Source of the DNA: Octopus sinensis
Taxonomy: Eukaryota
NCBI RefSeq assembly: GCF_006345805.1
Contig: NW_021833068.1
Span: forward strand, 25,618-89,617
Direction: 5' to 3'
Length of the DNA: 64,000 nt
Position 1 is the stretch's first letter, and the number at the start of each line of letters is the position of its first letter. The notes below the pieces were generated by a model. That model did not search any database. It saw only the letters and a program-made list of their open reading frames with translations, and was not told where the DNA came from. Shown here piece by piece: positions 1,745 to 44,193 of this stretch. A program made the position numbers and the translations under genes.

Positions 1745-1960
1745 TTAAGGCTGCAAGCTGGCAGAATCATTAGCACACAGAGCAAAATGCTTTCTGGCAT
1801 TCTGTCTGCCTTTACATGCTGAGTTCAAATTCAGCTGCGGTTGACTTTACCTTGCTGTTGATAAAATAAGTACCAGTTGAAAACTGGGGATGTTGTAATT
1901 GACTTATCCCCTCCCTGACCTTGCTGGCCTTGTGCCAGAATTGGAAATCATTATTGTTGT
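1745..1960 (+). mobile_element. SINE-like dispersed repeat
   Basis: gagttcaaatt B-box-like motif and a gataaaataagtaccagttg core, related to sequence near 42215-42250 and 25190-25210. Recognised by pattern only. Confidence 0.45.
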
Positions 1961-2087
1961 CTTGAGTCAAGACACTAATGACGGAATAATACATTGGGAG
2001 AATTCAAACTAAAGAAACATATAAACATGATTATATACAAAACAGAAAATGTCCTGGTTTATCTTGTCGTTGCCAGTGAATACTTAC

Positions 2088-2263
2088 AGTGATTGTAAAA
2101 ATGTTTTTAATTTTTCTTTCAAATGTTGATTTTCTATGCAGTCCAATGGGGTCACTTTCTCATCATTACGATGGTATAAGCTGGCTCCATGGCTGGCAAG
2201 ATAACTCAAAACTACTATTTCAGAGAGCCTCCTATCCTTGTCCAGTTGGAGCTCTCTGCAGCA
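2088..2263 (-). CDS. Exon linking the ankyrin region to the RING: CCRELQLDKDRRLSEIVVLSYLASHGASLYHRNDEKVTPLDCIENQHLKEKLKTFLQS
   Basis: catttgcag acceptor and gtaagt donor. 176 nt, phase 0 to 2, consistent with both neighbours. Confidence 0.88.
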
Positions 2264-3304
2264 CTGCAAATGATGAAATATAAAACGATGAGTAGAATAT
2301 TACACAAATATATATTGTAGATAAACAAATCATGTCAAATGTAGGAAATGTAATGGAACAAGTATCACAAATAACAGAACACAACAAAGCAACAAGAACC
2401 TATCTTTACAACAGGCTTGATAAAGCCAACTGGCCAGAACAAAAGAAATATTTATAGAAGAGTATTGTATATATAAATATAACACAACAACATAACAACA
2501 ATGGCAAGCTACATTTTGTTACACAAAGGCCATTTTAATTACCATGGGGGTCGTGTGATGGTCTATGGTCACTCAAGATTTTCTGTAATTCCTTGTGGAG
2601 ATTTTAACTGGTCGCAACAAGAAGTATTTTTTTAACTACATATATACTCCTACTTGAATTTGTTTACCATCTGCAAAACTGCCATCAAAACTCAGATTTT
2701 TGACATCTTCAGATCTGCATCTATGAAAGCAGTCACCCATATTTTCCTAATGGTAATTTCGATAATCCAAATATTGATTGGGAAACCTTTCACTGGTCAC
2801 AAAGTGCAACTCATTTCCATAACAACAAACAATGAACAGAGAACACCAAGAATATAATAATTTCTTCAGACACAGCAACAAAACCAACACCAGACAGACA
2901 TATCCAAGCATATCAATAATGTTTCCAAAATTTATAAAGAAACATTTTTGGCTGATGAAGTGAAGTAAAGATTGGTGTGGTGGTTGAGGCAACACACCAA
3001 CACATTATAGTCAAGAAATTATTGAAACTGTTAGTCTGATAGACAATTCCTATAATAATGGGTCGTTGACTGCTAGAGTAGCTTCTTCTCACCAAAGTAG
3101 ACATTACAACAATACACAGGTGACCATCAACTGTCTGAAATACATTCACACATCTGTAGTGACCGTTACATATTTGGGAATCAAAGTGTTGCTTAAATTC
3201 TGCAACAACAGACAAAAAACACCATCAAATCTACCAGTGGATAGATGCTGATGTCTTTCAAACAAACAAACAAACACACACACACACACATATATATATA
3301 TATG

Positions 3305-3450
3305 CACCTAGAAGTAGTTGATAGCTACTGTTATCTAGGTAATCAAGTCAGTAGTGGAGGTGGATGCGCCAAGAGCATAGCTACTAGAATAAGATTAAGC
3401 AGGGCAAAGTTCAGAGAGCTTCTATCTTTGTTGGTAACAAAGGGCCTCTA
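3305..3450 (+). mobile_element. RTE-clade LINE fragment (post-RT region)
   Basis: Translates LEVVDSYCYLGNQVSSGGGCAKSIATRIRLSRAKFRELLSLLVTKGL, homologous to the ORF at 56664-57923. Confidence 0.8.
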
Positions 3451-4333
3451 TGACTATCTGTCTAATTACATCGTCATACATACAATCTCGTGACATCACA
3501 CTTTTGTGCGCACATCTTAATGTAAATTCATTCTCATCACATCTCTCTTCTTTACAATCATTACAAGGGGTATTACTGTAGTCAATGTATACACAAACAC
3601 CAAGCCCTGGCAATATTTGGAACCCTAATTATCAACTTTGAATAAACTCAGTTATATATTCATTATCATACTGATAAAAGAAACTTTCCTCGAAGTCCAT
3701 AAATATATTTTCTTTAAATTTAATTGTCCATAAACGAATTTATTTTCCTTTCCTTTCTTTGAAAAAGAATAATGCAATATGCTTTCTCGCAATTAACACA
3801 GTTCAACTCGTTTAACTTGAAATTCGATATTTAAAATAGTTTGTGAATTTCTCTTTCTTAAATTTAAAGACTTATCTCTGTCGTTGGTCACCTCTCCTTC
3901 ATACAGTGATGGCAGTGTTTACATGACACATATTTAAGACAGGTTACCTTCTTTACAGTGGAGTGGCCATGCTTTTGAAGGTGAAAGAAGATGGAATATT
4001 GTTAGTTACATAATACAACTAGTGCTATCAGGAGAAACTGGATTATTTAATACTAAAGGAAGAGAAGTGGATGGGAGTGAAAGAAAATAGCAAACAATGT
4101 CTGCCTGTTTCTCTATTTCTCTCTCTTTCTCTCACTCACACATACACACATCCTCCTCATCATCATTTTACATTCGTTTTCTATGCTGGCATAGGTCGGA
4201 TGGTTTGGGAGGAGTTGGTCGGCCACAGAGCTGCTCAGGCACCAATTGCCAGTTTTGGCATGGTTTCTACGGTTACATGCCCTTCCTAATGCCAACCACA
4301 CACACACATTCACAAACAATTTTAAAAACTTAC

Positions 4334-4543
4334 CTCATCTAAAATAGGAATGCGTTTCACCTCAGAATGAAATTCCTCTTTCTCTGCTGCAATATGCAAA
4401 CAATTATTGCCATCCTTGTCAACGGCATTCATCTTTGCACCGCACGTGATGATTTCATGGACTATTCCGATGTGGGCTGCATACACGGCTTCCAGTAAGG
4501 GTGTTCTTTTATCATCGTTCTCAATATCCAGTTTCACTGAATC
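4334..4543 (-). CDS. Ankyrin exon D: DSVKLDIENDDKRTPLLEAVYAAHIGIVHEIITCGAKMNAVDKDGNNCLHIAAEKEEFHSEVKRIPILDE
   Basis: ttttacttccacaaag acceptor and gtaagt donor. 210 nt, phase 0 to 0, with two ankyrin motifs. Confidence 0.9.
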
Positions 4544-5299
4544 CTTTGTGGAAGTAAAAATAGAAATTGAAAATGTACATGAAAATTAGGGTGGATGTGA
4601 CATTGCTGTCTTCTACTGGGTACTTGATCAACCTGATCATGTACATTTGATGTTTGTTAGTGTAGTCAACCTTCTGTAAGGTCCCTCTATAACACGCTAT
4701 GGATATTTGTTAGGGACATGATAAATCTATTAAGATGTCATAAACAGATTGTTTCAGCCTCATCTTCATTTATCCCTCACTATATAGTATGTTTTAGGGG
4801 ACTAGAACAAGAGTGAAAATATAATTAGCAGATCAAGTCTAGTAAAGACGAATTATATACTTAATGTAAGCCTTTCATGTTGCTATGTTAATAAGGGATC
4901 CATAAAACGGGGGAGTTGGTTAGTGTCCACATCCTTACATCACTGTACATACAGATGCATAAATATATTAACGTTATGGATGTAACACGCACACACACAC
5001 ATATATATACACACACATATATATACACACACACATATATATATACACACACACATTCATATAACAATCAAAATTGCCACTGAATATATATATATATAAT
5101 ATATATGCATATTTACATAAATATATGTACATACCTACATATATATATATGTATATAGATATATACATGCATATATGGGTACAAGACATAAAAAAATGAG
5201 CACAATGAGAAACGAAAACATAGAAATGAACTTTTCTTCGAACAACTAAAAAAAACAAACAGATCTCTTGGATCCACTTTAGACAGCCTCTCCTTCTCT

Positions 5300-6290
5300 C
5301 ACGCGTTCTCTACATTTAGGAGCCTTTCATAGTGGCACTTCCAAGCCTATTTCTTTGCAGAGTCACTAACTGCAAGGGAGCCATCATCCATGTGAACACA
5401 CTTCTCTCCCACAACATCACAATTTTCCTTGGCAAGCCAAAACACTTCAAATCTCTGCTCCTCACATTGCAAGACACTGGCAAACTTCTTCCTTTCTGCT
5501 TCACTCATGGCTGAGTATACCTGCTTCCTAGCTTCCTTTCTAACTGCCAGATACAACTCCCAGCTGCCACCACCCTTCCCATCCTTGTCCCTGTCAATTA
5601 CCCTTTTCCACCACCACATCACCCTATGCCTGGCTGGGACATTGCACCAGCCACAAATTTGGTCTGAAACTCTCAGCAAGTTGTCCCATTGGAACTTCCA
5701 CTTATCCTCAATGCTGCAAGTCTGAAATTCCTCCTCCTTCCCATTATATGCTTCATTTAGGACATCACTAAACTTCTGACTAATTGAAGGTTCCTTCAGC
5801 TTCCATACTCTTCTTTTCCAAACTGGCTTGCTTCTTGGAATCCTTCAAGCCAGTAGCTTGAACTCCCTAATGAGTAACCTATGCTGTGGGCTACATTCTT
5901 CTCTATTGAAGGCCTTTGCATTTATGAGCAGACATGAATCCTGCTTTTGGGTGAGAATGTAGTCAGTTTGGTGAGCATGTACCTTGGATTTATAGGTTAT
6001 CAAGTGGCTGGCCAGCTTTCTGAAGCAAGTGTTGCGATTATTTGGTCATTTGCACCACAGAACTCCAGTAGCCTTGCACTCCCCTCATTTCAGGAACCAA
6101 ATCTGCGTCCCCCATGGAAGATACCTCGGTGCTGCCCAACATATCCATTGAAATCACTGGCCACGAAGATAAGGTCACAGTCATTTATCTTTGAAGTGGC
6201 CAGCAGAAGAGTGTCATAGAAGTAGCCCTTCAGTTGATTTGGCAGACCCAGTTGTCTGTGTGTGTGTGGGGAGGAGCGCATAGGACGAGA
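5300..6290 (-). mobile_element. Degraded RTE-clade LINE fragment (endonuclease/linker region)
   Basis: ORF 5347-5679 (RKEARKQVY...AERKKFASVLQCEEQRFEVF...DVVGEKCVHMDDGSLA) parallels 57923-58165. ORF 6090-6281 contains an endonuclease-like ASDFNGYVG motif. Confidence 0.75.
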
Positions 6291-6717
6291 TGATTGTTGC
6301 TGTGCCTACATTGACTGCAGCTATCAGCATCTGAAAAGGTTGTTTATGGACACCTGTAAATAGGAGTTAATCAGGTATTGTCACCACCAGCAGTGGAGGG
6401 TGCCGCATCCTGGCATTCATGCAATGCAATGTTAATACAAATACAGGTAAATAAGGTAGGTAGACAAATACAGTAAGGGTAGTTAATCCGTTGAATTAGG
6501 TAGGGAGAGGAGAAGGGAAGTTGATTCATCATGTATTGATGGTAATGGATTAACGAAGCAATAGGGACTGAGTGCAGCGTACCCTCATTTAGCTTTGTTG
6601 CTGGGGACAAGGACTTTTAACTTTTCTCTGTTGCATAATCTCAGCATGCAATGTGTCTGGTACGAATAACTCTGTGTGTACATAAACATATACATACATA
6701 TATATATATAAATATAT

Positions 6718-6781
6718 ATTGACCGTCCAACCCATGCTAGCATGGAAAATGGACGCTAAACGATGATGATGATGATGATGA
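6718..6781 (+). mobile_element. Short RTE 3'-tail copy with (GAT)n
   Basis: gaccgtccaacccatgctagcatggaaaatggacgctaaacgatgatgat matches the RTE tail at 53793-53850. Confidence 0.7.
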
Positions 6782-7260
6782 TATATATATATATAATACA
6801 CACATACATAGACATTTATACATATGTACAGAGGGGAAAAAGTAGCCAAAAGAAGCCAAATAAATTATTGGACACAAGATAAAATGCCGACACCAACAAT
6901 GTACATATATAACATATCACACACACATACAACATGACAGAGCGATATTAAAAGATGATGATGATGATGATGATAGTATATATAATCTGATATATATGGG
7001 TTGAATTCATAATGACCTTGTTTTGTCTGACCATTGAAGATAGTACTGTCAGCAGTGGTGGTCAGTTGGACTATCAACACCACTACTACTGTCATCATTG
7101 TTATCACCAATATAATTATTCTTCACAGACCCAAGACCTGCCGTTTAAAGGCTGCTGCAGTGAAGTTGATTAAACCCACCCAGCAGAATTTCACTGGTAT
7201 TTTGATGATATTAATATTGAATATTAAAGACAGGATATAATTATGTATTTGTTAACTAAC

Positions 7261-7297
7261 CTGGGCCAGCATTGAAGCCACCACATCATAGTGTTGA
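7261..7297 (-). CDS. 37-nt exon E completing the last cassette ankyrin repeat: (N)QHYDVVASMLAQ
   Basis: Long pyrimidine tract ending ...ctataactttcag, and a gttagt donor. Phase 2 to 0, which is the phase needed to join exon A1 to exon D. Confidence 0.8.
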
Positions 7298-9258: not shown

Positions 9259-9821
9259 TTTCGAACTGCCAGATGTAGAGGGGTGTCACCCTCGAGGTTC
9301 ACCTTATTGATATCGATGCCTTTCTGTTTCAGGAGAAGTTCAACAACTTCCGTGCGTTCACGAGTAGAGGCAAGATGTAGAGGGGTGTTACCTTGCTTGG
9401 TCACAGCATTAACATCCGTGCCATTCTGTTGCAGGAGAAGTTCAACAACGTCCTTGCTTCCATTGCGACAGGCAAGATGGAGAGCTGTCTGACCATCTTC
9501 CTTCACAGCTTTAACATCCGTGTCTTTATCTTGCAGGAGAAGTTCAACAACGTCCTTGCTTCCATAGCGACAGGCAACATGGAGAGCTGTCCAACCATTT
9601 TCCATCACAGCTTTAACATCCGTGCCATTCTGTTGCAGGAGAAGTTCAACAACGTCCTTGCTTCCATTGCGACAGGCAAGATGGAGAGCTGTCCAACCTT
9701 TGTTCTCCACAGCATTAACATCCGTGTCTTTATGTTTCAGGAGAAGTTCAACAACGTCCTTTCTTCCATAGCGACAGGCATCATGCAGAGCTGTCGAACC
9801 CAATTTATTTTTCTGATTAAC
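9259..9821 (-). CDS. Ankyrin exon A1 (563 nt = 257 + 3x102)
   Basis: cttttttag acceptor and gtaagt donor, phase 0 to 2. Open frame of 34-aa repeats (GxTALHxACRxGSKDVVELLL). Confidence 0.92.
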
Positions 9822-15826: not shown

Positions 15827-16088
15827 TTTTGAACTGCCAGATGGAGAGGGGTGTCACCCTCTTCGTCCACCTTATTGGATTGATGCCATTTTGTTGCTGG
15901 AGAAAATCAACAACAACTTCCTTGTGTCGATGAGCAGAGGCAAGTTGTTGTAGAGGGGTGGAACCTTGCTTGGTCTCAGCTTTAACATCCGTGCCATTCT
16001 GTTGCAGGAGAAGTTCAACAACGTCCTTGCTTCCATAGCGACAGGCAAAATGGAGAGCTGTCCAGCCCAATTCATTTTGCTGATTAAC
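15827..16088 (-). CDS. Ankyrin exon A2 (short type), frameshifted as assembled
   Basis: Splice sites are intact. It is 262 nt versus 257 nt in A4: two 3-nt slippage duplications and a 1-nt deletion. Confidence 0.7.
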
Positions 16089-18074: not shown

Positions 18075-18113
<39 letters not shown>

Positions 18114-18121
18114 TATATATA

Positions 18122-22646: not shown

Positions 22647-23311
22647 TTTCGAACTGCCAGATGGAGAGGGGTGTCACCCTTGAGGTTCACCTTATTGACA
22701 TCCATGCCTTTCTGTTTCAGGAGAAAATCAACAACTTCCGTGCGTCCATGAGAAGAGGCAAGATGTAGAGGGGTGTAACCATGGTTGGTCACAGCATTAA
22801 CATCCGTGCCATTCTGTTGCAGGAGAAGTTCAACAACATCCTTGCTTCCATAGCGACAGGCAAGATGGAGAGCTGTCCAACCATGTTCCCTCACAGCCTT
22901 AACATCCGTGTCTTTATGTTGCAGGAGAAGTTCAACAACGTCCTTGCTTCTATAGCGACAGGCAAGATGGAGAGCTGTCGAACCATCTTCCATCACAGCC
23001 TTAACATCCGTGTCTTTATGTTGCAGGAGAAGTTCAACAACGTCCTTGCTTCCATAGCGACAGGCAAGATGGAGAGCTGTCCAACCATCTTCCATCACAG
23101 CCTTAACATCCGTGTCTTTATGTTGCAGGAGAAGTTCAACAACGTCCTTGCTTCCATAGCGACAGGCAAGATGGAGAGCTGTCGAACCATCTTCCATCAC
23201 AGCCTTAACATCCGTGTCTTTATGTTGCAGGAGAAGTTCCACAACGTCCTTGCTTCCATATTGACAGGCAACATGGAGAGCTGTTGCACTAAAATTATTT
23301 TTCTGATTAAC
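22647..23311 (-). CDS. Ankyrin exon A3 (665 nt = 257 + 4x102)
   Basis: Open frame with intact AG/GT, phase 0 to 2. Confidence 0.92.
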
Positions 23312-23766
23312 CTAAAAAAGATAAACAATAAAGACATTAAAGATGGTGTTTATTGGGGGAGAAGGAAAAAAAATGAAAAATGTCAGAGAAACAGAATCAG
23401 ATAAATTTAAACAGGTGGAATGAAGGTTGGGGGAAAATAAATGAGATTTATAATGTATCTATACACACACACATATGTGTATGCATATATATATATATAT
23501 ATACACTCTCGCACATACATATATACATAAATACCTATATATACATACGTGTTTTATATCTTCACGGATCATTTGTTTATGCATTTTTGTGTATATATGC
23601 GTTTATGTGTGTGTATATTTGTGTATGTATGTACAGGTCTGTGTGAGCTGAAGAAAAGTTTTTAATTAAAAACATATAAATATAAACTGTTTCAAATACA
23701 TAAAACACAAACCAACATACATATCATTATACACACACACACACATATATATATATATTCGCTGAC

Positions 23767-23923
23767 CTGTAAATTGTTATTTTCTTTGCTATTTAACAGG
23801 ACTTTGACTACATCTTCATAGTTATTCCACACAGCCAGATGTAGAGGTGTGTCGCCCCATGAGTCCTGCTTATTAACATTTGCTCCACTGGAGACTAAGA
23901 AGGCCACAGAATCCGTTCGGTGG
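23767..23923 (-). CDS. Ankyrin exon B3: HRTDSVAFLVSSGANVNKQDSWGDTPLHLAVWNNYEDVVKVLLNSKENNNLQ
   Basis: 157 nt, same splice contexts as B1. Confidence 0.9.
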
Positions 23924-24030
23924 CTGAAAGGAAGAAAAACAAACATAAAACATCACATTCACTTAATAATTACATTAAATATACACTCGTGTTCCATTAA
24001 ATGCATAAAAACCTATGTATACTACAGCCT

Positions 24031-24076
<46 letters not shown>

Positions 24077-24937
24077 CAAATATGTATGTATGTAGAGGCA
24101 AACCCACACAAATGTGCCCCAGGCGAATGTTTCCTTGTAACTTCTAGAAAAATGGATGTTTTTCAATGAAATTTCTTTCACAAATATCCTTCAGATGGCA
24201 AATATTCCAATTATATCGGAATTTGTTGTAAGAAAAACCTTTTCGGTGGGTGGAGAGAGAAATTTAGGAAAGTTCACCCGAGTCGGCTTTCTTTCCAAAA
24301 AAATAGATATTTTCAATGAAATTTCAATAAAACCGTTTCGGATGGTGAAGATTTCGATTATATCGGAATTTAATATGAAGAAAATTATAAAAATTGGTGG
24401 ATTCGCACAGATATACACTGACACAAAACAGAAAATAAAAAGATGAACTTGGGAAAATAACCGTGATGTGTGTCAGTATGTGTGTGTGAAACCATCAAAT
24501 TTTTAAAGTTCTTTCATGTTAAATTCCGATATAATCCTAATCTACACCATTTGAAAGGGATTTGTAGAAATTTTCACAGAAACAAAATATCCACTTTTCT
24601 GAAAGTTATAGAAAAACAAAACGGATTTGGGTGAATTTTGAGAAAGTCAACTCCTCAACGTTTGAAAATTTGTTTTTACAACAATTTCCGATATAATTGG
24701 AATCTTCATCATCTGAAGCATTTTTGTCAAAGAAATTTCATTAAAAAATATCAATTTGTCTCAAAGTTATAAGGAAACAAATTCGTCGTGGGGCCCAGTT
24801 GTGTACGTATGCCTATACATATGCACGCATATATATATTTATAGGATCTCGAGTATCGAGTACCTACGTCTGGCTAGCGCGCACGCGCGAATCCGGGACC
24901 GCTCTGCGATAATGTCAAAGTCAATAATATTATACAG

Positions 24938-24995
<58 letters not shown>

Positions 24996-25557
24996 ATGCA
25001 TGTATGTGTATGTATGTATATATATATGTATGTATATAGAGAGACAGACAGACAGAGAAATATGAGCCACTGAAATACGTATAATCGTTAATACACAGTA
25101 GACAAATGTGTACGTGTGTGTGTATACTCATATTAATAGGTGAGGGTATAAAGTATAAATATTTTTATCCCAGCGAGTGTACAATAGAAAACAAGGATTA
25201 AGTACCGTTGTTAGTATCTATATATTTGGTATACATTGAAAAATGTATTGTAATCCTTTTGCGAAAGATGGAATGTCTGAAAATTATAGACAAACTAATT
25301 GATAGCAGATTTCTCATCAATCTAAAAATCAACAACAACAGCAGCACGTCGTAATTGGCGGGAAAACTACGTCTGCAAATGTAATGTTGTCATAGCAACA
25401 GACTATGCAAGAGAAAGTTTGCTGTTAAGGGCAACGAGGCGTATTTTTACCGCCAAAAGAAACAGTTAAGTATGGCGGTCATATAACACACGTAAATGAA
25501 TATATAAACACACAAATATTTATTATATATATGTGTGTGTGTATACAAATATATATT

Positions 25558-25592
<35 letters not shown>

Positions 25593-26450
25593 ATGTTAAA
25601 CTCCAGTGTTTGACTCGAGCAAAAAAAAATTGTGCAATAGGTGTAAAATAAAATGTATTAAACAAATATGTAAAAAAAAAATACACTCTGGCGAACGAGG
25701 GGCGGTGGAGACGACTCGGAAAATTCACACGATCAATCTCACAGGATCCGAAAACTACATGTTGTTTTATACCTGTTACACTTTTTGTTTTCATTTTTGG
25801 GACCGGTTGTCGAGTGGGGTTACCGGATCGTGTGAATCATCCGAGTCCGCACCCCAGATATACACTGACACAAAACAGAAAATAAAAAGATGAACTTTGG
25901 GAAAATAACCGTGATGTGTGTCAGTATGTATGTGTGCGAAACCATCAAATTTTTAAAGTTTTTTCATGTTAAATTCCGATATAATCCTAATCTACACCAT
26001 TTGAAAGGTGTATTAGGTGGAAAAAATATTAGGTGGAAAAAAAATCAACAGCATAATATAGTGAAATAGCAACATAATAACAATAACGAACAATAATAAT
26101 ACAGTACAATGCAAAACATTATAGATCAGCAAATACATATAAAATGAAAAATATTGATTGACATCAGCAAAATCCAGAAGTGTACATGCATATAAAGGCA
26201 TACAAGTCAGACTTTTGACGGTGATATATATTAAGTGGTAAGTTTAGAAATGATTTAAGATTGAAAGCTCAATAGGATTGACTGGAACATTTGAATTTCA
26301 ATTGTCTCCGTTACGGTTGGTTTATTAAGATACACTTACATACATACACACGTATATGTGCGCTTATACATATATACATAGATAAACCAAAAAAAACAGA
26401 AAATACAAGCTTACATACACACATACATACATAACTACGTACGTATAGAT

Positions 26451-26492
<42 letters not shown>

Positions 26493-27369
26493 CAAATACA
26501 TATACCCGAAAACAACCACGCACACATATATGTATATATATACATACACATACATACTGTTAACTAAAATTGTATTAAGAATCATTAAAATTAAGATAAT
26601 ATTAATTGTTAATACAACGAAAGGGGTTGGAAGGGTAATTCGTAATATACAAAAAAGAGGGGCCTAAAAGTGTAGAAAAAGGTAAGGGTTAATAAAAGGC
26701 AAAGGTTGGGAAATATTGAGATAAAATTTATAAGAAGGGTATAAACTCAAAACACAGATTTACCATAACCAGTGTAAAGAAGATGTAGGTTATTTGCATA
26801 AGATACATAATTAAAAATTACACCACATATTCCGTAAACAATCAGAAGACTAGGAAACCGTCCAGATATCAACACTTGTAAATTTTATCTGAATATTTTC
26901 CAACAGTAATCAGACACAAGAACAGGAGTAAAGAGGGGGGACAATCTATTAAATGAACCCCTGGATATTACTGGTACAGATTTTGACCCCAGGAGTTGAA
27001 CTTGGAACACAAACGGATCAAAGTAAGGGGATGATTCTGCATTTAGCCCAGGGCCAGAGGAAAGAGGAAAATTTCAAGAGAAGGTGGGGGATGAGGTGTT
27101 TTACATGGAATGAAAGGAAGAAGGGAGAGGATTTGAACCTGTAACGTTGAGGTAACGAAGGATGAGATGAAGTAAAGAATCCAGTCAGGTAACATCCACA
27201 ACAATAATTATGAGGATTAATTAATGAAGTTAGATTAGTGTCATTAGAGTGTGAGAGAGAGAGGTGAAGCATGACGACCCATGGTGGGATTATGACATGA
27301 ATGACTCGAAACAAGAAAACAAACATTAAAGAAACAGATTTGGATAATCCAAATCCATTGGGGACTTAC

Positions 27370-27626
27370 TTTTGAACTGCCAGATGGAGAGGGGTGTCAC
27401 CCTCTTCGTCCACCTTATTGGCATTGATGCCATTCTGTTGCTGGAGAAAATCAACAACTTCCTTGTGTCGATGAGCAGAGGCAAGTTGTAGAGGGGTGGA
27501 ACCTTGCTTGGTCTCAGCTTTAACATCCGTGCCATTCTGTTGCAGGAGAAGTTCAACAACGTCCTTGCTTCCATAGCGACAGGCAAAATGGAGAGCTGTC
27601 CAGCCCAATTCATTTTGCTGATTAAC
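27370..27626 (-). CDS. Ankyrin exon A4 (short type, 257 nt)
   Basis: Open frame VNQQNELGWTALHFACRYG...GDTPLHLAVQ, phase 0 to 2. Confidence 0.9.
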
Positions 27627-28365
27627 CTAAATAAGATAAACAATAAAGACATTAAAGATGGTGTTTATTGGGAGAAGAAGGAAAAAAATGAAAAATGTCA
27701 GAAAAACAGAATCAGATTAATTTAAACAGGTGGAATGAAGGTGGGGGGAAAATAAATGAGATTTATAATGTATCTATACACACACACATATGTGTATGCA
27801 TATATATATATATACACTCTCGCACATACATATATACATACGTGTTTTATATCTTCACGGATCATTTGTTTATGCATTTTTGTGTATATATGCGTTTATG
27901 TGTGTGTATATTTGTGTATGTATGTACAGGTCTGTGTGAGCTGAAGAAAAGTTTTTAATTAAAAAAATATAAACTGTTTCGAGAAACTGGCGAACAAATA
28001 ATTTCAGTTTTGTGAGACCAACTCCGAAAGATCACCCGTTTTTTTTCCAATGAAATTTAACAGAAATCCACCCTTTTCAATGTTGTAGCAAAGAATTATG
28101 TGTGGATTGTGGGAAAGAAAGTGGAAAAGTGTGTGTTGAGGGTGGAAGGGTATTGATCTGCAACTCATCAAAGATATTTCATTACCATAATCATTATCTA
28201 TAAACAAGGAAATGAGCAACTTTTATTTAAAAAATATAAATCGTCAATAATGAAGAAACAAGATTTGGGGCACTAAACTGTATGTATACATCATATACAT
28301 AAAACACAAACCAACATACATAACTTTATACACACACACACATATATATATATATATTCGCTGAC

Positions 28366-28522
28366 CTGTAAATTGTTATTTTCTTTGCTATTTAACAGGA
28401 CTTTGACTACATCTTCATATTTATTCTTCACAGCCAGATGTAGAGGTGTGTTGCCCCCTGAGTCCTGCTTATTAACATTTCCTCCACTGGAGACTAAGAA
28501 GGCCACAACATCAATTTTGTGC
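28366..28522 (-). CDS. Ankyrin exon B4: HKIDVVAFLVSSGGNVNKQDSGGNTPLHLAVKNKYEDVVKVLLNSKENNNLQ
   Basis: 157 nt with intact splice sites. Confidence 0.9.
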
Positions 28523-29583
28523 CTGAAAGGAAGAAAAACAAACATGAAACATCACATTCACTTAATAATTACATCAAATATACACTCGTGTTCCATTAAA
28601 TGCATAAAAACCTATGTATACTACAGCCTCGTGTGTGTATATATAATTATATATGCAAATATGTATGTATGTAGAGGCAAACCTACACAAATGTGCCCCA
28701 GGCGAATGTTTCCTTGTAACTTCTAGAAAAATGGATGTTTTTCAATGAAATTTCTTTCACAAATATCATTCAAATGGCAAATATTCCAATTATATCGGAA
28801 TTTGTTGTGAGAAAAACCTTTTCGGTGGGTGGAGAGAGAAATTTAGGAAAGTTCACCCGAGTCGGCTTTCTTTCCAAAAAAATAGATATTTTCAATAAAA
28901 CCGTTTCAGATGGTGAAGATTTCGATTATATCGGAATTTAATATGAAGAAAATTATAAAAATTGGTGGATTCGCACAGATATACACTGACACAAAACAGA
29001 AAATAAAAAGATGAACTTTGGGAAAATAACCGTGATGTGTGTCAGTATGTATGTGTGCGAAACCATCAAATTTTTAAAGTTTTTTCATGTTAAATTCCGA
29101 TATAATCCTAATCTACACCATTTGAAAGGTGTATTAGGTGGAAAAATATTAGGTGGAAAAATATTAGGTGGAAAAAATCAACAGCATAATATAGTGAAAT
29201 AGCAACATAATAACAATAACAACAATAATAATACAGTACAATGCAAAACATTATAGATCAGCAAATACATATAAAATGAAAAATATTGATTGACATCATA
29301 GCAAAATCCAGAAGTGTACATGCATATAAAGGCATACAAGTCAGACTTTTGACGGTGATATATATTAAGTGGTAAGTTTAGAAATGATTTAAGATTGAAA
29401 GCTCAATAGGATTGACTGGAACATTTGAATTTCAATTGTCTCCGTTACGGTTGGTTTATTAAGATACACTTACATACATACACACGTATATATGCGCTTA
29501 TACATATATACATAGATAAACCAAAAAAACAGAAAATACAAGCTTACATACACACATACATACATAACTACGTACGTATAGAT

Positions 29584-29642
<59 letters not shown>

Positions 29643-29644
<2 letters not shown>

Positions 29645-32600
29645 AAGTAGAACTAAAAGAAGGACTGGAAGAGCTAAAGGAAAAGAAAAAGCTCAAGCAG
29701 GACCAAAGAGTGAAACAACCAGAAATAGAAGTGGATCCGCAAAGGATGGAACCAAACAGCGCACACGGGTGTGTATGTTCTACCTGAGAGGTTCCTGCTG
29801 GCATGGAAAGGAAGGTGCAGGCTGCCGCTTTGCACATCGGGGACCTTGCCACAGAGACACGAGGCAGATGGACAAACCATCAACACAAAGAAAAGGGATG
29901 GACCACGCACCACCTGCCCCAAAGCGGAGGTACGCAGATGTTGTGCGCGCCACAAACAGCCAACATGATGTTGTCGAAAGAGCAGCTGCTGAGCAACAAT
30001 CTTTTTTGTGCATGGCACAAAAGATTGTACAGCAGCTGACCTGGCTTCATCAAACCCAAGCCCGCAGGTGGGACTACCCACTATATACCAGACCACCACA
30101 GCAAACAGACACAGGATGGACACCGCCGTCAACAACGTACACCTCACCTCGATACTCCTACTGAACATCAGAGGACTGCAAACACTCAGTAACAGGACAA
30201 AGATCCCGTTCCTGAGAGACTTTGTTGCATGCAATCAAGCCTTATGCATAGCACTTACAGAAACGCACCTGAAACCGGACATAGCAGATGCGGAGTTACA
30301 CATACCACAGTATGCTGTACTACGGACCGACAGGAAAGAAAGGAGTCATGGAGGTGTTGCTATGTACATCCGTGAGGACCTCACACCCCAGGTCCTCTTG
30401 TCATACTCAAACTCGGTGTGTGACACACTAATTGTACATATTAGGCAACTTGATGTAGTTGTGTGTGCTACATATCGCCCTCCAGATGCCCCAAGCCATG
30501 TGGGCAAGTTTGAAGACTGCCTTATAAAAATAGAAGAAATTCTAACCACATTAGAACAACACATAGGTGTGCTTCTTATGGGAGACTTCAATCTGCCCAA
30601 TGTCAGATGGCCCGAGGGCCTTTCTCTCCCAGGAATGACAAGTTGTGAACGAGGACAGGCGAGGTCCCTCCTGAACCTCATCAACACCCTGTACATGGAG
30701 CAGGTAATACTCCAACCAACCAGGGCAGGTAACACACTGGATCTCTGCTTCACAAATGACATGGATCTCATCCATAATGTGAAAGTGACACCGACAATAC
30801 TCTCGGATCACAACATGATAGAGCTGACCATGTACGGGCCAAAAGAGAGCACGGACATGCAGCCTACAAGAAACCCTCAAAATCTTTCCAGCTTGAACTA
30901 CCATAAGGCAAACTGGAAACAAATTGAGAAAGAGATCCTCAAACAAAACTGGCCTGAATGTCTCTCCTCGCCAGACATCGACATGAAACTTCAACAATTC
31001 ATGTCTGTAATGCAAGCCATATGCTACAAATGTGTCCCAGAGAGAAAGGCCACTGTACACAAGAACAAAATCCCCAGAGAGAGGAAAATTTTAATGAGAC
31101 GGCGTACGAAATTTTCAAATCGCCTAAACAAACAGATTGAAAGCAGTGAAAAGTCCCGCCTAAAAATAAAACTGTTGGAAATCGAAAAATGTCTGCAACT
31201 CTCCCATGAAAAAGAAAGAGCAGACAAAGAAGCCTGGGCTATAGAAAACATAAAATCTAACCCCAGAGCTTTCTACATGTATGCCAAAGAAACAGCTACG
31301 GTGCACTGTAGGATAGGGCCACTCCTTGAAAAGGATGGCACACTCACAGGAAAAACAATGAGGGTAAGTGAAATACTGAATGAGCAATTCAAGAGTGTTT
31401 TCACTCCACCCCTTGGGCATTTCCAAATCACCAATCCAACTGACTTTTTTACCACTGCAGATATAAAATCAGAGGCGGCGACGATAGATTACATCGATAT
31501 AAAGGAAGACGATGTAACCAAGGCTATAGATGAAATGAAAACAGACTCAGCTACTGGCCCCGATGGATTCCCGGCAATCCTCCTAAAAGCATGTAAGAGA
31601 GTCCTAGCAAGACCACTGCAGTTCCTCTTTCAGAGCTTCCTTGCAGCTGGCAAACTTCCAGGAAAACTGAAGGAAGGAAGGTAAAATATGCCCCATTCAT
31701 AAAGGAGGTAGCAGAGCGGAAGCCAAGAACTATAGACCTATCTCTCTGACCTCACACATCAGCAAGGTCATGGAACGAATAGTCAGAAGGAAGCTGATCA
31801 CCTTCCTTGAAGAAAATACTTGCTGCCCGACACCCAACATGGTTTCCGACCAGGGAGAAGCTGTTTAACTCAGCTCCTACAACACTATGACTGGGTGCTG
31901 AAACGGCTGCTCAACCACTCAAATGTGGAAGTGATATATCTCGACTTTGCAAAGGCCTTTGATAAAGTCGATCATGGAATGATATGTCACAAACTGCGTG
32001 ATCTCAACATAGTTGGAAAACTGGGAGAATGGCTTCATGACTTTCTGAAGGATAGAAGTCAGGTGGTAGTAGCCAATGGGGCCACCTCCATTAACACACA
32101 AATAGTGAGCGGTGTTCCGCAGGGCACTGTTCTGGGACCACTACTGTTCATAATGGCCCTCTCAGACATGCCCTCAGCCACGCAGAGAGCCACGATCACA
32201 AGTTATGCAGATGATACAAAAGTTTCACAGGCAATACAGAACCCTGAGGACACTAAACACCTGCAATGTGAGCTAGACGAAATATAGAAGTGGGCTGAAA
32301 AGAATAGCATGCAGTTCAATGCTGGAAAGTTTCAAGCTTTATACTATCAGCATGCAAAACTGAATGCAATACCCAATGAATACACTGGACCCGGAGGGAT
32401 TGCAATCCCAGAGGCACAATCAGTGCGTGACCTGGGTATTCACATGAGTGATGACGCGACCTTTCATGTACATGTTGCTAAACTGGCAATGAAATGTAGA
32501 CGGCTGGCTGGATGGATTCTTAGAACCTTTAGAACAAGAGAACAAAAAACCATGATGGTCCTCTGGAAGACACTTGTCCTAAGCCACTTTGACTATCGCT

Positions 32601-33204
32601 CTCAGCTATGGTCACCATCCAGTGTCAAGTTGATCACAGAACTTGAGGCGATCCAACGAAGCTACACAAAGAAGATAGCCTCTATGCAGAATGTAAGCTA
32701 CTGGGAAAGACTCAAGAGATTAAAATTATATTCTCTGGAGCGTAGGCGGGAAAGATATGCCATAATATACATCTGGAAGATCCTGGAGGGAACTGTCCTG
32801 AACTTTGGCATCGAGAGTTACGCAAATGCCAGAACTGGGCGCCACTGCGTGGTGCCAAGGACTCCAAACCTGCCATCAAGATGTAGGACAAGATTCTGTG
32901 ATAGCCTGGGCTTCCGAGGCCCACAGCTCTTCAATATCCTCCCGAAGAACCTGAGAGACCTGCATGGGGTGGATACAGATGTCTTTAAAATGAAGCTGGA
33001 TCTCTTCCTGTCAGGTGTCCCAGATGAACCAACTTCACGGCAGGAGGGGCAGATGAGGGCAGCTGCATCGAACTCTCTCATGCACCAAATAGCAGTTGCT
33101 AGAAAGCCTCCATGAAGTGAAACCAAGTAGCAACACCAAATGGCGGTGCCCCAGCATGGCCACAGCTCATGAGCTGAAACTGGAATCAATCAATCAATCA
33201 ATCA

Positions 33205-33205
<1 letters not shown>
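29643..33205 (+). mobile_element. CR1-clade LINE copy 2 (ORF1 tail with CCCH finger; ORF2 APE-RT, disrupted)
   Basis: ORFs 29769-30164, 30008-31684, 31820-32287 and 32309-33115. QHGFRPGRSC, YLDFAKAFDKVDH, GVPQGTVLGPLLF and YADDTK motifs. (ATCA)n tail. Confidence 0.95.
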
Positions 33206-33243
<38 letters not shown>

Positions 33244-34003
33244 AACAAATACATATACCCGAAAACAACCACGCACACATATATGTATATATATACATAC
33301 ACATACATACTGTTAACTAAAATAGTATTAAGAATCATTAAAATTAAGATAATATTAATTGTTAATACAACGAAAGGGGTTGGAAGGGTAATTCGTAATA
33401 TACAAAAAAGAGGGGCCTAAAAGGGTAGAAAAAGGTAAGGGTTAATAAAAGGCAAAGGTTGGGAAATATTGAGATAAAATTTATAAGAAGGGTATAAACT
33501 CAAAACCCAGATTTACCATAACCAGTGTAAAGAAGATGTAGGTTATTTGCATAAGATACATAATTAAAAATTACACCACATATTCCGTAAACAATCAGAA
33601 GACTAGGAAACCGTCCAGATATCAACACTTGTAAATTTTATCTGAATATTTTCCAACAGTAATCAGACACAAGAACAGGAGTAAAGAGGGGGGACAATCT
33701 ATTAAATGAACCCCTGGATATTACTGGTACAGATTTTGACCCCAGGAGTTGAACTTGGAACACAAACGGATCAAAGTAAGGGGATGATTCTGCATTTAGC
33801 CCAGGGCCAGAGGAAAGAGGAAAATTTCAAGAGAAGGTGGGGGGTGAGGTGTTTTACATGGAATGAAAGGAAGAAGGGAGAGGATTTGAACCTGTAACGT
33901 TGAGGTAACGAAGGATGAGATGAAGTAAAGAATCCAGTCAGGTAACAACAACAACAACAATAATTATGATGATTAATTAATGAAGTTAGATTACAGTGTC
34001 ATT

Positions 34004-34041
<38 letters not shown>

Positions 34042-34145
34042 GAAGCATGACGACCCATGGTGGGATTATGACATGAATGACTCGAAACAAGAAAACAAAG
34101 ATTAAAGAAACAGATTTGGATAATCCAAATCCATTGGGGACTTAC

Positions 34146-34911
34146 TTTTGAACTGCCAGATGGAGAGGGGTGTCACCCTTGAGGTTCACCTTATTGACAT
34201 CCATGCCTTTCTGTTTCAGGAGAAAATCAACAACTTCCGTGCGTCCATGAGAAGAGGCAAGATGTAGAGGGGTGTAACCATGGTTGGTCACAGCATTAAC
34301 ATCCGTGCCATTCTGTTGCAGGAGAAGTTCAACAACATCCTTGCTTCCATAGCGACAGGCAAGATGGAGAGCTGTCCAACCATTTTCCGTCACTGCTTTA
34401 ACATCGATGCCATTCTGTTGCAGGAGAAGTTCAACAACATCCTTGCTTCCATAGCGACAGGCAAGATGGAGAGCTGTCCAACCATGTTCCTCACAGCCTT
34501 AACATCCGTGTCTTTATGTTGCAGGAGAAGTTCAACAACGTCCTTGCTTCTATAGCGACAGGCAAGATGGAGAGCTGTCGAACCATCTTCCATCACAGCC
34601 TTAACATCCGTGTCTTTATGTTGCAGGAGAAGTTCAACAACGTCCTTGCTTCCATAGCGACAGGCAAGATGGAGAGCTGTCGAACCATCTTCCATCACAG
34701 CTTTAACATCCGTGTCTTTATGTTGCAGGAGAAGTTCAACAACGTCCTTGCTTCCATAGCGACAGGCAAGATGGAGAGCTGTCGAACCATCTTCCATCAC
34801 AGCCTTAACATCCGTGTCTTTATGTTGCAGGAGAAGTTCAACAACGTCCTTGCTTCCATATTGACAGGCAACATGGAGAGCTGTTGCACTAAAATTATTT
34901 TTCTGATTAAC
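34146..34911 (-). CDS. Ankyrin exon A5 (766 nt; expected 767 = 257 + 5x102), one-base frameshift as assembled
   Basis: Splice sites are intact. It reads gttcctcac near 34489 where A3 has gttccctcac, a loss of one C from a homopolymer. Confidence 0.8.
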
Positions 34912-38976: not shown

Positions 38977-39233
38977 TTTTGAACTGCCAGATGGAGAGGG
39001 GTGTCACCCTCTTCGTCCACCTTATTGGCATTGATGCCATTCTGTTGCTGGAGAAAATCAACAACTTCCTTGTGTCGATGAGCAGAGGCAAGTTGTAGAG
39101 GGGTGGAACCTTGCTTGGTCTCAGCTTTAACATCCGTGTCTTTATGTTTCAGGAGAAGTTCAACAACGTCCTTGCTTCCATAGCGACAGGCAAAATGGAG
39201 AGCTGTCCAGCCCAATTCATTTTGCTGATTAAC
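38977..39233 (-). CDS. Ankyrin exon A6 (short type, 257 nt; LLLKHKDTDV variant)
   Basis: Open frame, phase 0 to 2. Confidence 0.9.
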
Positions 39234-44038: not shown

Positions 44039-44193
44039 TTCTCCACTGCATAATGCAATGCTGTCCACTTCTTGTCTTCGTCACTGATGTTGAGATCAGC
44101 GCCAGATTCTGTCAATAAGGTTATTAACTCTTTATTGCCTTGTTCACAGGCAACCATGAGAACCGTAACACCTTTTGAATTTCTGTTGTTGAC
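44039..44193 (-). CDS. Ankyrin exon C: VNNRNSKGVTVLMVACEQGNKELITLLTESGADLNISDEDKKWTALHYAVE
   Basis: tcttcttcag-type acceptor at 44194-44196 and gtaagg donor. 155 nt, phase 0 to 2, joining exon B in frame. Confidence 0.9.

What the first reader, a model, noticed from the sequence alone, without database searches (positions are those of the whole stretch)
22647..34911. Second, intra-exon tier of expansion: 102-bp ankyrin units vary in number (0, 3, 4, 5 extra) and differ by non-synonymous single bases
Seen: A exon lengths are 257, 563, 665 and 767 (766 as assembled), that is 257 + n x 102. In A3 three consecutive units (starting 22897, 22999 and 23101) are identical except at 22951 (GGA>AGA, G>R) and 23082 (TCG>TGG, S>W), with no synonymous change. 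Across A exons the hairpin reads ENKGW, MENGW, KEDGQ, MEDGS, MEDGW, REHGW, TENGW, TKQGN and TNHGY on a largely constant ALHxAC..G.KDVVELLL scaffold. The repeats are 34 aa rather than the canonical 33. Inference: an accordion-like coding minisatellite, reminiscent of PRDM9 zinc-finger or TALE arrays, in which unequal crossover shuffles specificity residues. It is probably polymorphic between individuals.
Basis: partly seen in the sequence, partly recalled or inferred. Interest (0 to 1): 0.72.

Follow-up and report, generated by a model that had tools for sequence, protein, structure and literature searches.

The report
Expanding ankyrin-repeat array in octopus exon
Inside one exon of an octopus gene for a putative ubiquitin ligase (ankyrin repeats, RING finger, death domain), a 102-base unit encoding one ankyrin repeat is repeated a variable number of times, and the copies differ mostly at the tip of the binding loop; this is a good animal example of a known way that repeat proteins evolve, not a new mechanism.

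Summary
On the minus strand there are six 'A' exons of 563, 262 (a broken 257), 665, 257, 766 and 257 nt, that is 257 + n x 102 with n = 3, 0, 4, 0, 5, 0. Each 102-nt unit encodes a 34-residue ankyrin repeat. The two cited substitutions (22951 G>R, 23082 S>W) are exact. The window is octopus DNA, 98.3% identical to its Octopus vulgaris ortholog. The gene belongs to an octopus family with ankyrin repeats, a RING finger and a death domain.

The accordion reading is well supported. Unit 4 of A3 is an exact chimera of units 4 and 5 of A5, while the rest of the two exons differs at 4 of 563 nt. The O. vulgaris ortholog has n = 1 and 0, and paralogs range from n = 0 to 8. Differences between units cluster in the beta-hairpin tip (15 of 31 changes in 15 of 102 nt). 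An independent O. sinensis array varies at the canonical ankyrin binding positions.

Three things are not shown: positive selection (28 nonsynonymous to 3 synonymous changes, P = 0.057; about neutral in the paralog), polymorphism between individuals, and expression. Several copies carry frameshifts. The closest known analogue is the highly internally conserved ankyrin repeats of fungal NLR proteins. I class it as a new member of a known kind, of moderate interest.

The parts
22647..23311 (-). Exon A3, 665 nt = 257 + 4 x 102. The frame is open. It starts in phase 0 and ends with 2 nt of a split codon. Units: u0 23311-23210, u1 23209-23108, u2 23107-23006, u3 23005-22904, u4 22903-22802, u5 22801-22700, terminal part 22699-22647.
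   Evidence: Pfam Ank/Ank_2 E = 1e-74 / 4e-103; AlphaFold2 model pLDDT 98.1
22904..23209 (-). Three near-identical MEDG(S/W) units of A3 (0-2 nt apart). The substitutions are S>W at 23082 and G>R at 22951.
22802..22903 (-). A3 unit 4 (REHGW). It is a chimera of A5 unit 4 (5' part) and A5 unit 5 (3' part), which marks a 102-bp unequal exchange.
34146..34911 (-). Exon A5, 766 nt = 257 + 5 x 102 - 1. One base is missing from a GGG run at 34489-34490, which breaks the frame as assembled. It has one extra unit, TENGW (34402-34301), relative to A3.
9259..9821 (-). Exon A1, 563 nt = 257 + 3 x 102, frame open. Internal units are ENKGW, MENGW and KEDGQ.
27370..27626 (-). Exon A4, 257 nt (n = 0), frame open; short type.
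38977..39233 (-). Exon A6, 257 nt (n = 0), frame open. It differs from A4 unit 0 by 4 clustered nt (QQNG to KHKD), which looks like a conversion tract.
15827..16088 (-). Exon A2, 262 nt (a 257-nt exon with +3, +3, -1). It is frameshifted, either a pseudo-exon or an assembly error.
23767..23923 (-). Exon B3 (157 nt, starts with 1 nt of a split codon, two ankyrin repeats), the partner of A3. Homologous B exons: B1 10276-10432, B2 16826-16980 (two 1-nt deletions), B4 28366-28522, B5 35369-35525, B6 39679-39835.
44039..44193 (-). Upstream ankyrin exon e0 (155 nt), which precedes the six B+A pairs.
953..7297 (-). Single-copy 3' exons: c0 7261-7297, c1 4334-4543, c2 2088-2263 and c3 953-1095 (RING finger, zf-C3HC4_3). 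Nearly identical to O. vulgaris P0121 (c1 differs at one residue); 84-98% identical over c1-c3 to P0005.
29700..33200 (+). LINE retrotransposon (endonuclease + reverse transcriptase) inside the 11.6-kb duplicated super-unit. A second, more degraded copy lies at about 18000-21600. Context only, not part of the coding array.

Best explanation
The 102-bp periodicity is a real, in-frame tandem array. Each unit encodes one 34-residue ankyrin repeat: a 7-residue helix, a 9-residue helix and a hairpin loop.

The array lies inside the 'A' exon of an octopus gene whose family has the architecture ankyrin repeats, RING finger (zf-C3HC4_3), death domain. That architecture suggests an E3 ubiquitin ligase whose ankyrin groove selects the partner.

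Adjacent units share scaffold stretches of about 75-80 nt that are identical or nearly so. Out-of-register pairing (unequal crossover, gene conversion or replication slippage) therefore adds or removes exact multiples of 102 bp. This keeps both the reading frame and the solenoid fold.

The same exchanges homogenise the scaffold, while differences persist at the beta-hairpin tip (positions 1, 2, 3, 5) and in the helix-2/hairpin linker. Each gain, loss or reshuffle therefore changes the putative recognition surface.

Shown here: the array, its fold, the chimeric unit, copy-number differences between duplicated exons, species and paralogs, and the clustering of variation.

Inferred: that the variable residues set binding specificity, that selection maintains their diversity, and that the exons are expressed.
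For: - Array and exon lengths.
- Ankyrin identity: Pfam Ank E = 1e-74 and Ank_2 E = 4e-103. The AlphaFold2 model built with an alignment has pLDDT 98.1. It matches DARPin and ankyrin structures at TM 0.89-0.93 and rmsd 1.2-1.7 A.
- Unequal exchange: A3 unit 4 equals A5 unit 4 over nt 1-97 and A5 unit 5 over nt 20-102. The rest of A3 and A5 differs at 4 of 563 nt, whereas A5 units 4 and 5 differ at 6 base substitutions (plus the missing base in unit 4).
- Recent in-place amplification: the MEDG units are 0-2 nt apart and cluster together, while first and last units cluster by position across exons and species.
- Copy number across loci: the O. vulgaris ortholog L004 (98.3% identical flank) has n = 1 and n = 0. 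L001 has n = 2, L003 n = 1 and O. sinensis P0122 n = 5. L005 has n = 8, seen as 9.7 copies by Tandem Repeats Finder.
- Clustering of change: 15 of 31 minimal changes fall in the 15-nt hairpin (P about 1e-5). In L005, 18 of 23 changes fall in codons for positions 33, 1, 2, 3, 5, 10, 12, 13 and 14.
- Family architecture (ankyrin repeats, RING, death domain).
Against: - No expression or population data are available.
- A5 (-1 nt), A2 (+3, +3, -1) and B2 (two -1) are out of frame as assembled.
- G>R at 22951 replaces the conserved Gly15, and the short-type exons have TPLQ instead of TPLH. Both suggest relaxed constraint in some copies.
- The overall excess of nonsynonymous change is borderline (28 to 3, P = 0.057).
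- In the O. sinensis array the binding-face codons show 15 nonsynonymous and 3 synonymous changes on 22 and 5 sites, a ratio of about 1. Hypervariable patches could therefore simply be segments that escape homogenisation.
- Scaffold identity holds at synonymous sites too, so it reflects recency or conversion rather than demonstrated purifying selection.
Confidence: 0.75

Rival explanations
1. These are decaying duplicate exons. The six B+A pairs are recent, redundant copies. Most are not used, and the 102-bp arrays drift neutrally as ordinary minisatellites with no role in specificity.
For: - Frameshifts in A5, A2 and B2.
- Gly15>Arg shared by A3 and A5, and TPLH>TPLQ in A2, A4 and A6.
- The O. 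vulgaris ortholog makes do with two A exons and one B exon.
- The nonsynonymous to synonymous ratio is not significantly above neutral.
- An NCBI model of a paralog (P0123) reads through a frameshift.
Against: - A1, A3, A4, A6 and five of the six B exons keep open frames and perfect AG/GT splice sites.
- Neutral drift would spread changes evenly, yet half of them fall in 15% of the unit, at the positions that form the ankyrin binding face. The same pattern recurs in an independent array.
- The single-base deletions in G and A runs are of the type that long-read consensus errors produce.
Confidence: 0.15
2. This is an assembly artefact. The unit counts (3, 4, 5), and perhaps the tandem super-units themselves, come from mis-assembly of a repetitive region or from two haplotypes placed in tandem.
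For: - The super-units are 96.4-97.6% identical, which makes the region hard to assemble.
- Homopolymer-type single-base deletions at 34489-34490 and in B2 point to imperfect consensus.
- No second assembly of this genome was available.
Against: - The arrays are under 0.8 kb, which single long reads span easily.
- Each array has its own unit sequences. The TENGW unit exists only in A5, W at 23082 only in A3, and A1's three units are all different. A collapse or expansion would instead give identical units.
- There are three super-unit copies, which two haplotypes cannot explain.
- Independent assemblies of two other species show n from 0 to 8 in the same family.
- If A3 and A5 were alleles placed in tandem, the 4-versus-5 difference would itself be the predicted polymorphism.
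Confidence: 0.07

Closest known systems
Highly internally conserved ankyrin, TPR and WD repeats of fungal NLR proteins (Podospora anserina and others; Dyrka et al. 2014, PMC4986451; Paoletti et al. 2007, PMC1805685)
   Same: - Ankyrin repeats are nearly identical to each other within one protein. A3's four internal units average 89% amino-acid and 96% nucleotide identity over 136 residues.
- Repeat number varies.
- Exchange between repeats is evident.
- Variable sites lie in the hairpin and inner-helix binding face.
- The array is attached to a death-fold or cell-death signalling module.
   Different: - There is no NACHT or NB-ARC domain. The partner domains are a RING finger and a death domain.
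- The host is an animal. PMC4986451 reports that only 0.8% of metazoan ankyrin, TPR and WD repeats reach this level of internal conservation.
- The repeat is 34 residues, not 33.
- Allelic repeat-number polymorphism and positive selection are shown in the fungi but not here.
PRDM9 zinc-finger array and TALE repeat arrays (coding minisatellites). This comparison rests on my own knowledge and was not tested here.
   Same: - In-frame tandem units lie within one exon. TALE units are also 102 bp and 34 aa.
- Scaffolds are near-identical, with differences concentrated at contact residues.
- Unit number changes by unequal exchange.
   Different: - Those arrays read DNA; ankyrin repeats bind proteins.
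- The fold is different.
- The extreme allelic diversity of PRDM9 has no counterpart shown here.
Designed ankyrin repeat proteins (DARPins) and consensus ankyrin proteins
   Same: - The model superposes on DARPins at rmsd 1.2 A and TM 0.93 (6mol_A).
- The natural variable positions, above all in the O. sinensis paralog (1, 2, 3, 5, 13, 14), coincide with the positions randomised in DARPin libraries (2, 3, 5, 13, 14, 33; my own knowledge).
- Whole repeats can be added or removed without loss of fold.
   Different: - This array is natural, with a 34-residue period.
- In the window's own array positions 13 and 14 are almost fixed, and a second variable patch lies in the helix-2/hairpin linker (positions 26-28).
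Mind bomb 2 (MIB2) E3 ligase, the name NCBI gives to many family members
   Same: Ankyrin repeats followed by a C-terminal RING finger of the zf-C3HC4_3 type.
   Different: - Pfam finds no MIB/HERC2 domain, ZZ finger or MIB repeats in the three family members scanned.
- There is a single RING finger.
- There is a C-terminal death domain that MIB2 lacks.

Membership tests
Ankyrin repeat (Pfam PF00023 / PF12796) | Sequence match to the ankyrin profile, with the TxLH motif and conserved Gly and Leu scaffold | tested here: met
   Ank E = 1.1e-74 (7 stretches) and Ank_2 E = 3.6e-103 on B3+A3. PDB sequence hits to ankyrin-1/2 at E = 3e-145.
Ankyrin repeat (Pfam PF00023 / PF12796) | Helix-turn-helix plus hairpin units stacked into a solenoid | tested here: met
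   AlphaFold2 model with alignment: pLDDT 98.1, with helices of 7 and 9 residues per unit. Foldseek TM 0.89-0.93 to AnkB, ankyrin-1 and DARPins.
Ankyrin repeat (Pfam PF00023 / PF12796) | Canonical 33-residue period | tested here: not met
   The period is 34 residues (102 nt). The extra residue lies between helix 2 and the hairpin (QHKDT/QQNGT against the consensus four residues). This is a length variant of the family, not grounds for exclusion.
Highly internally conserved repeat arrays as in fungal NLRs (PMC4986451) | More than 85% identity between repeats over at least 100 residues | tested here: met
   A3 internal units: mean 89% amino-acid and 96% nucleotide identity over 4 x 34 residues. 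The three MEDG units are at least 94% identical in amino acids, differing by 0-2 nt.
Highly internally conserved repeat arrays as in fungal NLRs (PMC4986451) | Repeat-number variation | tested here: met
   Met between duplicated exons (3, 4, 5), between species (ortholog 1 and 0) and between paralogs (0 to 8). Variation between alleles could not be tested.
Highly internally conserved repeat arrays as in fungal NLRs (PMC4986451) | Variable sites concentrated on the binding face (hairpin and inner helix) | tested here: met
   Window: 15 of 31 changes fall in hairpin codons (P about 1e-5). L005: 18 of 23 changes fall in positions 33, 1, 2, 3, 5, 10, 12, 13 and 14. The mapping to the face uses repeat position and the model's secondary structure, not a computed surface.
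Highly internally conserved repeat arrays as in fungal NLRs (PMC4986451) | Positive diversifying selection at those sites | tested here: inconclusive
   28 nonsynonymous to 3 synonymous changes overall, P = 0.057. L005 binding-face codons give 15 to 3 on 22 and 5 sites, a ratio of about 1.
Highly internally conserved repeat arrays as in fungal NLRs (PMC4986451) | NOD (NACHT or NB-ARC) domain upstream of the repeats | tested here: not met
   Pfam on P0121, P0122 and P0005 finds ankyrin repeats, zf-C3HC4_3 and Death only.
Hypervariable coding minisatellite (PRDM9 / TALE type) | In-frame tandem units within one exon, with near-identical DNA | tested here: met
Hypervariable coding minisatellite (PRDM9 / TALE type) | Many alleles of different length within populations | not testable with these tools
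   Only one assembly of this genome was available, and no read sets.
Mind bomb (MIB1/MIB2) E3 ligases | N-terminal MIB/HERC2 domains, ZZ finger and MIB repeats | tested here: not met
   None found by Pfam in three family members scanned. The window's own N-terminus lies outside the part studied.
Mind bomb (MIB1/MIB2) E3 ligases | Ankyrin repeats followed by a zf-C3HC4_3 RING finger | tested here: met
   RING exon c3 at 953-1095, 98% identical to P0005. PF13920 found in P0121, P0122 and P0005.

The most novel reading that the evidence does not exclude
Octopuses may carry a lineage-specific family of E3 ligases (ankyrin repeats, RING, death domain) that works as a germline-diversified intracellular recognition repertoire. 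In this reading the ankyrin groove is diversified on two nested levels: minisatellite-like gain, loss and reshuffling of 34-residue repeats, and tandem duplication of B+A exon pairs that are used as alternative cassettes or alternative first exons. It would be an animal counterpart of the highly conserved repeat arrays of fungal NLRs, feeding into death-domain signalling.
Probability: 0.15. Interest if true: 0.8.

Novelty: new member of a known kind. Interest (0 to 1): 0.45.

Why it matters
Repeat arrays that stay nearly identical yet vary at contact residues and in copy number are a recurrent solution for fast-evolving recognition. Examples are PRDM9, TALEs, fungal NLRs and lamprey VLRs.

Such ankyrin arrays are rare in animals: 0.8% of metazoan ankyrin, TPR and WD repeats, according to PMC4986451. 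I found no paper describing this octopus family.

If the arrays are expressed and polymorphic, they would give cephalopods a candidate fast-evolving substrate-recognition module linked to ubiquitination and death-domain signalling. They would also provide natural 'DARPin libraries' for studying how repeat number and hairpin residues set specificity.

In practice, the locus also shows that gene models in this family are unreliable: there are merged genes, read-through of frameshifts, and start codons placed in introns.

Tried and rejected
- **Locus look-ups.** Six family proteins (P0005, P0008, P0004, P0002, P0122, P0124) were not on record. DNA-level comparison was therefore limited to L001 to L005.
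- **Single-sequence AlphaFold2.** The model was mediocre (pLDDT 72.8, loops modelled as helices). I discarded it in favour of the alignment-based model.
- **First guess at the ortholog.** I first took L001 (the P0001 gene) for the ortholog because its flanks are 97% identical. I rejected it when the 3' exons matched only at 40-47% and L004 matched at 98.3% over 6.7 kb.
- **Species of the window.** Not resolved. It is closest to O. vulgaris, is not identical to the O. vulgaris or O. sinensis loci fetched, and no protein encoded by the window is in the protein database.
- **Whole-unit test of nonsynonymous against synonymous change.** Borderline in the window (P = 0.057) and null in L005 (P = 0.49). 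I therefore do not claim positive selection.
- **Literature.** Three searches for this octopus family (octopus ankyrin / death-domain expansions, MIB2-like mollusc expansions, tandem duplication in O. vulgaris / O. sinensis) found nothing on it; a fourth, on ankyrin-repeat evolution in general, supplied the fungal NLR and metazoan repeat papers used for comparison.
- **Duplication then divergence for A5 unit 5.** I considered that this unit arose by duplication followed by divergence, rather than A3 having lost a unit. It is disfavoured: it needs 6 substitutions in 204 nt against 4 in the other 563 nt.

Full report
**1. What is in the sequence**

The window is AT-rich eukaryotic DNA full of microsatellites. 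Tandem Repeats Finder reports 102-bp arrays at only three places: 9317-9800, 22698-23284 (5.8 copies, 92% matches) and 34197-34884 (6.8 copies).

The coding strand is the minus strand. Conserved acceptors (ttttttag|GTTAATCAG) and donors (AA|GTAAGT) define six homologous 'A' exons:

| Exon | Coordinates | Length (nt) | Extra units (n) |
|---|---|---|---|
| A1 | 9259-9821 | 563 | 3 |
| A2 | 15827-16088 | 262 | 0 (broken) |
| A3 | 22647-23311 | 665 | 4 |
| A4 | 27370-27626 | 257 | 0 |
| A5 | 34146-34911 | 766 | 5 (one base short) |
| A6 | 38977-39233 | 257 | 0 |

- A2 is a 257-nt exon with two 3-nt insertions and a 1-nt deletion.
- A5 lacks one G of a GGG run at 34489-34490.
- The cited substitutions are exact. 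Units 1 to 3 of A3 differ only by TCG>TGG at 23082 and GGA>AGA at 22951.

**2. What the unit is**

Each 102-nt unit encodes a 34-residue ankyrin repeat.
- Pfam gives Ank E = 1e-74 and Ank_2 E = 4e-103 for the B3+A3 translation. The 33-position profile aligns to 34 residues.
- Compared with the consensus, the extra residue lies in the linker between helix 2 and the hairpin (QHKDT or QQNGT, where the consensus has four residues).
- A single-sequence AlphaFold2 model was poor (pLDDT 72.8). With an alignment of 53 homologs the A3 product is predicted at pLDDT 98.1 and pTM 0.93. It forms a regular solenoid with helices of 7 and 9 residues per unit.
- That model superposes on DARPins, ankyrin-1 and ankyrin-B at TM 0.89-0.93 and rmsd 1.2-1.7 A.

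**3. The gene around it**

- Every A exon starts in phase 0 and ends with two bases of a codon.
- Each A exon is preceded by a 157-nt 'B' exon (one base plus 52 codons, two more ankyrin repeats). B1, B3, B4, B5 and B6 are intact. B2 has two 1-nt deletions in A runs.
- Upstream of the six pairs lies one further ankyrin exon, e0 (44039-44193).
- Downstream lie single-copy exons: c0 (7261-7297), c1 (4334-4543), c2 (2088-2263) and c3 (953-1095). Exon c3 is a RING finger.

The best protein hits are Octopus vulgaris and O. sinensis models. NCBI names them 'MIB2-like', 'ankyrin-3-like' or 'phosphatase 6 regulatory ankyrin repeat subunit B-like'. Pfam finds ankyrin repeats, one zf-C3HC4_3 RING finger and a death domain in them, and none of the Mind-bomb-specific domains. 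The family is therefore an ankyrin-RING-death family, not MIB2 proper.

The six pairs alternate between a long type and a short type. They form three copies of an 11.6-kb super-unit that are 96.4-97.6% identical. Each of the two complete copies carries the same LINE (endonuclease plus reverse transcriptase) on the opposite strand.

**4. Comparison with other genomes**

The true ortholog is O. vulgaris OX597842.1, 28.157-28.235 Mb (locus L004).
- Window 1-6718 matches it at 98.3%.
- e0, c0 and c1-c3 are all recognisable there.
- L004 has only one B exon and two A exons, of 359 nt (n = 1) and 257 nt (n = 0). A RING exon and a death-domain exon lie between them.
- The six-pair array and the long internal arrays are therefore specific to the window's lineage. 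They arose within roughly the divergence seen in the flanks (2-6%).

Other family loci give other unit numbers:

| Locus or protein | Species | n |
|---|---|---|
| L001 | O. vulgaris | 2 |
| L003 | O. vulgaris | 1 |
| L002 | O. sinensis | 0 |
| P0124 | O. sinensis | 2 |
| P0122 | O. sinensis | 5 |
| L005 (encodes P0123) | O. sinensis | 8 |

The L005 A exon is 1070 nt, with 9.7 copies by Tandem Repeats Finder and one codon deleted. Unit number is thus labile across the whole family.

**5. Evidence for the accordion mechanism**

- *A chimeric unit.* A3 and A5 belong to the youngest duplicates. Outside the region of the extra unit they differ at 4 of 563 nt. A3 unit 4 is identical to A5 unit 4 over nt 1-97 and to A5 unit 5 over nt 20-102, while A5 units 4 and 5 differ from each other at six base substitutions, apart from the base missing from unit 4. 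An out-of-register exchange within the shared 78-nt stretch, removing exactly 102 bp, explains this. Duplication followed by six substitutions in 204 nt is several-fold more change than the background.
- *The unit tree.* In a neighbour-joining tree, first units and last (TPLH-type) units cluster by position across exons and species. The three MEDG units of A3 and of A5 cluster together at 0-2 nt distance, with A1's MENGW unit as nearest relative. This points to an in-place triplication that happened after the A1 copy split off and before the A3/A5 duplication.
- *A conversion tract.* A6 unit 0 differs from A4 unit 0 only by four clustered bases. They swap the linker QQNG for KHKD, a motif present in other units. 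That is a conversion-like tract.

**6. Where units differ**

Among 14 internal units (12 from the window, 2 from L001), the minimum number of changes is 28 nonsynonymous and 3 synonymous.
- 15 fall in the five hairpin codons (ankyrin positions 1-5), all nonsynonymous.
- 7 fall in the helix-2/hairpin linker.
- Only 6 fall in the 19 scaffold codons.
- The hairpin concentration is far from uniform (P about 1e-5).
- The overall excess of nonsynonymous change is only borderline: P = 0.057 against 77% nonsynonymous sites.

In the independent O. sinensis array (L005, nine internal units), 18 of 23 changes lie in codons for positions 33, 1, 2, 3, 5, 10, 12, 13 and 14. There, synonymous changes are concentrated in the same codons: 15 nonsynonymous and 3 synonymous changes on 22 and 5 sites, a ratio of about 1.

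Entropy profiles of both arrays show an invariant scaffold and variable hairpin positions. In the paralog, positions 13 and 14 at the end of helix 1 vary as well. These are the positions known to form the ankyrin binding groove, and the ones randomised in DARPin libraries (my own knowledge; see also PMC4986451).

The pattern 'constant scaffold, variable contact positions' is therefore robust and recurrent. Whether it reflects diversifying selection, or only patches that escape homogenisation, is not decided by these data.

**7. Caveats on function**

- There is no transcript evidence for this window.
- A5, A2 and B2 are out of frame as assembled. Three of the four single-base deletions lie in homopolymer runs and could be consensus errors. 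A2 also carries two triplet insertions.
- G>R at 22951 (also present in A5) replaces the conserved Gly15, and the short exons read TPLQ instead of TPLH. Some copies may therefore be under relaxed constraint.
- NCBI models in related species use one B+A pair per transcript. They often start at an ATG in the intron just upstream of B (MFVFLPFS...). One model merges two genes, and another reads through a frameshift.
- A to next-B splicing and A to c0 splicing are both frame-compatible. Whether the pairs are included serially or used alternatively is open.

**8. Comparison with what is known**

The closest documented case is the highly internally conserved ankyrin, TPR and WD repeats of fungal NLR proteins. 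These show more than 85% identity over at least 100 residues, repeat-number polymorphism, exchange between repeats, and variable or positively selected sites on the concave face (PMC4986451). A3 meets the identity criterion: 89% amino-acid identity over 136 residues. The gene lacks a NOD domain, and allelic polymorphism and selection remain untested.

Three literature searches for this octopus family found no description of it; the comparison papers came from a fourth, general search on ankyrin-repeat evolution.

**9. Verdict**

- The accordion and unequal-exchange interpretation is well supported by the chimeric unit and by copy-number differences between duplicates, species and paralogs.
- The claims about specificity residues under selection and about polymorphism between individuals are plausible but unproven.
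- This is a new member of a known kind of system, of moderate interest.
- It would rise in importance if the nested exon-pair and repeat-unit expansions prove to be an expressed, polymorphic recognition repertoire.

Noticed in passing
window 9259-44193 (six B+A exon pairs), compared with L004 17005-51595: The window has six B+A exon pairs between e0 and c0. The O. vulgaris ortholog (98.3% identical flank) has one B exon, two A exons, and a RING exon plus a death-domain exon between them. This is a large, very recent structural difference at the exon-pair level.
   Followed up: partly
window ~29700-33200 and ~18000-21600, + strand: Two copies of a LINE (Exo_endo_phos_2 endonuclease and RVT_1 reverse transcriptase ORFs) lie at the same relative place in the 11.6-kb super-unit. 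The element therefore inserted before the super-unit duplicated. The 18-21.6 kb copy has more broken ORFs.
   Followed up: partly
window 34489-34490 (A5); 15827-16088 (A2); 16826-16980 (B2): There are frame-breaking indels. A5 has GGG>GG. A2 has +CAA, +GTT and -G. B2 has two AAA>AA deletions. These are either pseudo-exons or long-read consensus errors, and the sequence alone cannot tell which.
   Followed up: partly
window, about 25 nt upstream of the B exon acceptors (for example 23946, 10455, 28545, 35548, minus strand): An in-frame ATG (MFVFLPFS...) sits in the polypyrimidine tract before at least four B exons. NCBI models of relatives (P0004, P0005, P0008) use it as the start codon. The B+A pairs might act as alternative first exons.
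   Followed up: no
window 39233-39132 (A6 unit 0) compared with 27626-27525 (A4 unit 0): The two units differ only by four clustered bases, which turn the linker QQNG into KHKD. That motif is present in other units and in O. vulgaris. It looks like a short gene-conversion tract.
   Followed up: partly
L005 7536-8605 and 18365-19011 (O. sinensis VCDQ01005398.1): This paralog has a 1070-nt A exon with eight extra 102-bp units, one of them lacking a codon. It also has a 166-bp tandem repeat that seems to duplicate a small exon encoding VCPKSEEKAVQAVVESV. That would be a third level of repeat expansion in the family.
   Followed up: partly
window 41175-42102; 54075-56206; 17595-17650, 26011-26042, 29132-29176, 37637-37669: Three non-coding repeats were seen. 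A 99-bp satellite (9 copies) lies between e0 and B6 and is also present, with more copies, in L004. A GC-rich 370-bp array has 6 copies. A 15-16-bp minisatellite (TATTAGGTGGAAAAA) varies from 2 to 3.9 copies between super-units.
   Followed up: no
window 44039-44193 (e0) compared with L004 17005-17159: Exon e0 is only about 90% identical to its O. vulgaris counterpart, while neighbouring non-coding sequence is 94-98% identical. Compared with L001, the matching region is 81% identical.
   Followed up: no
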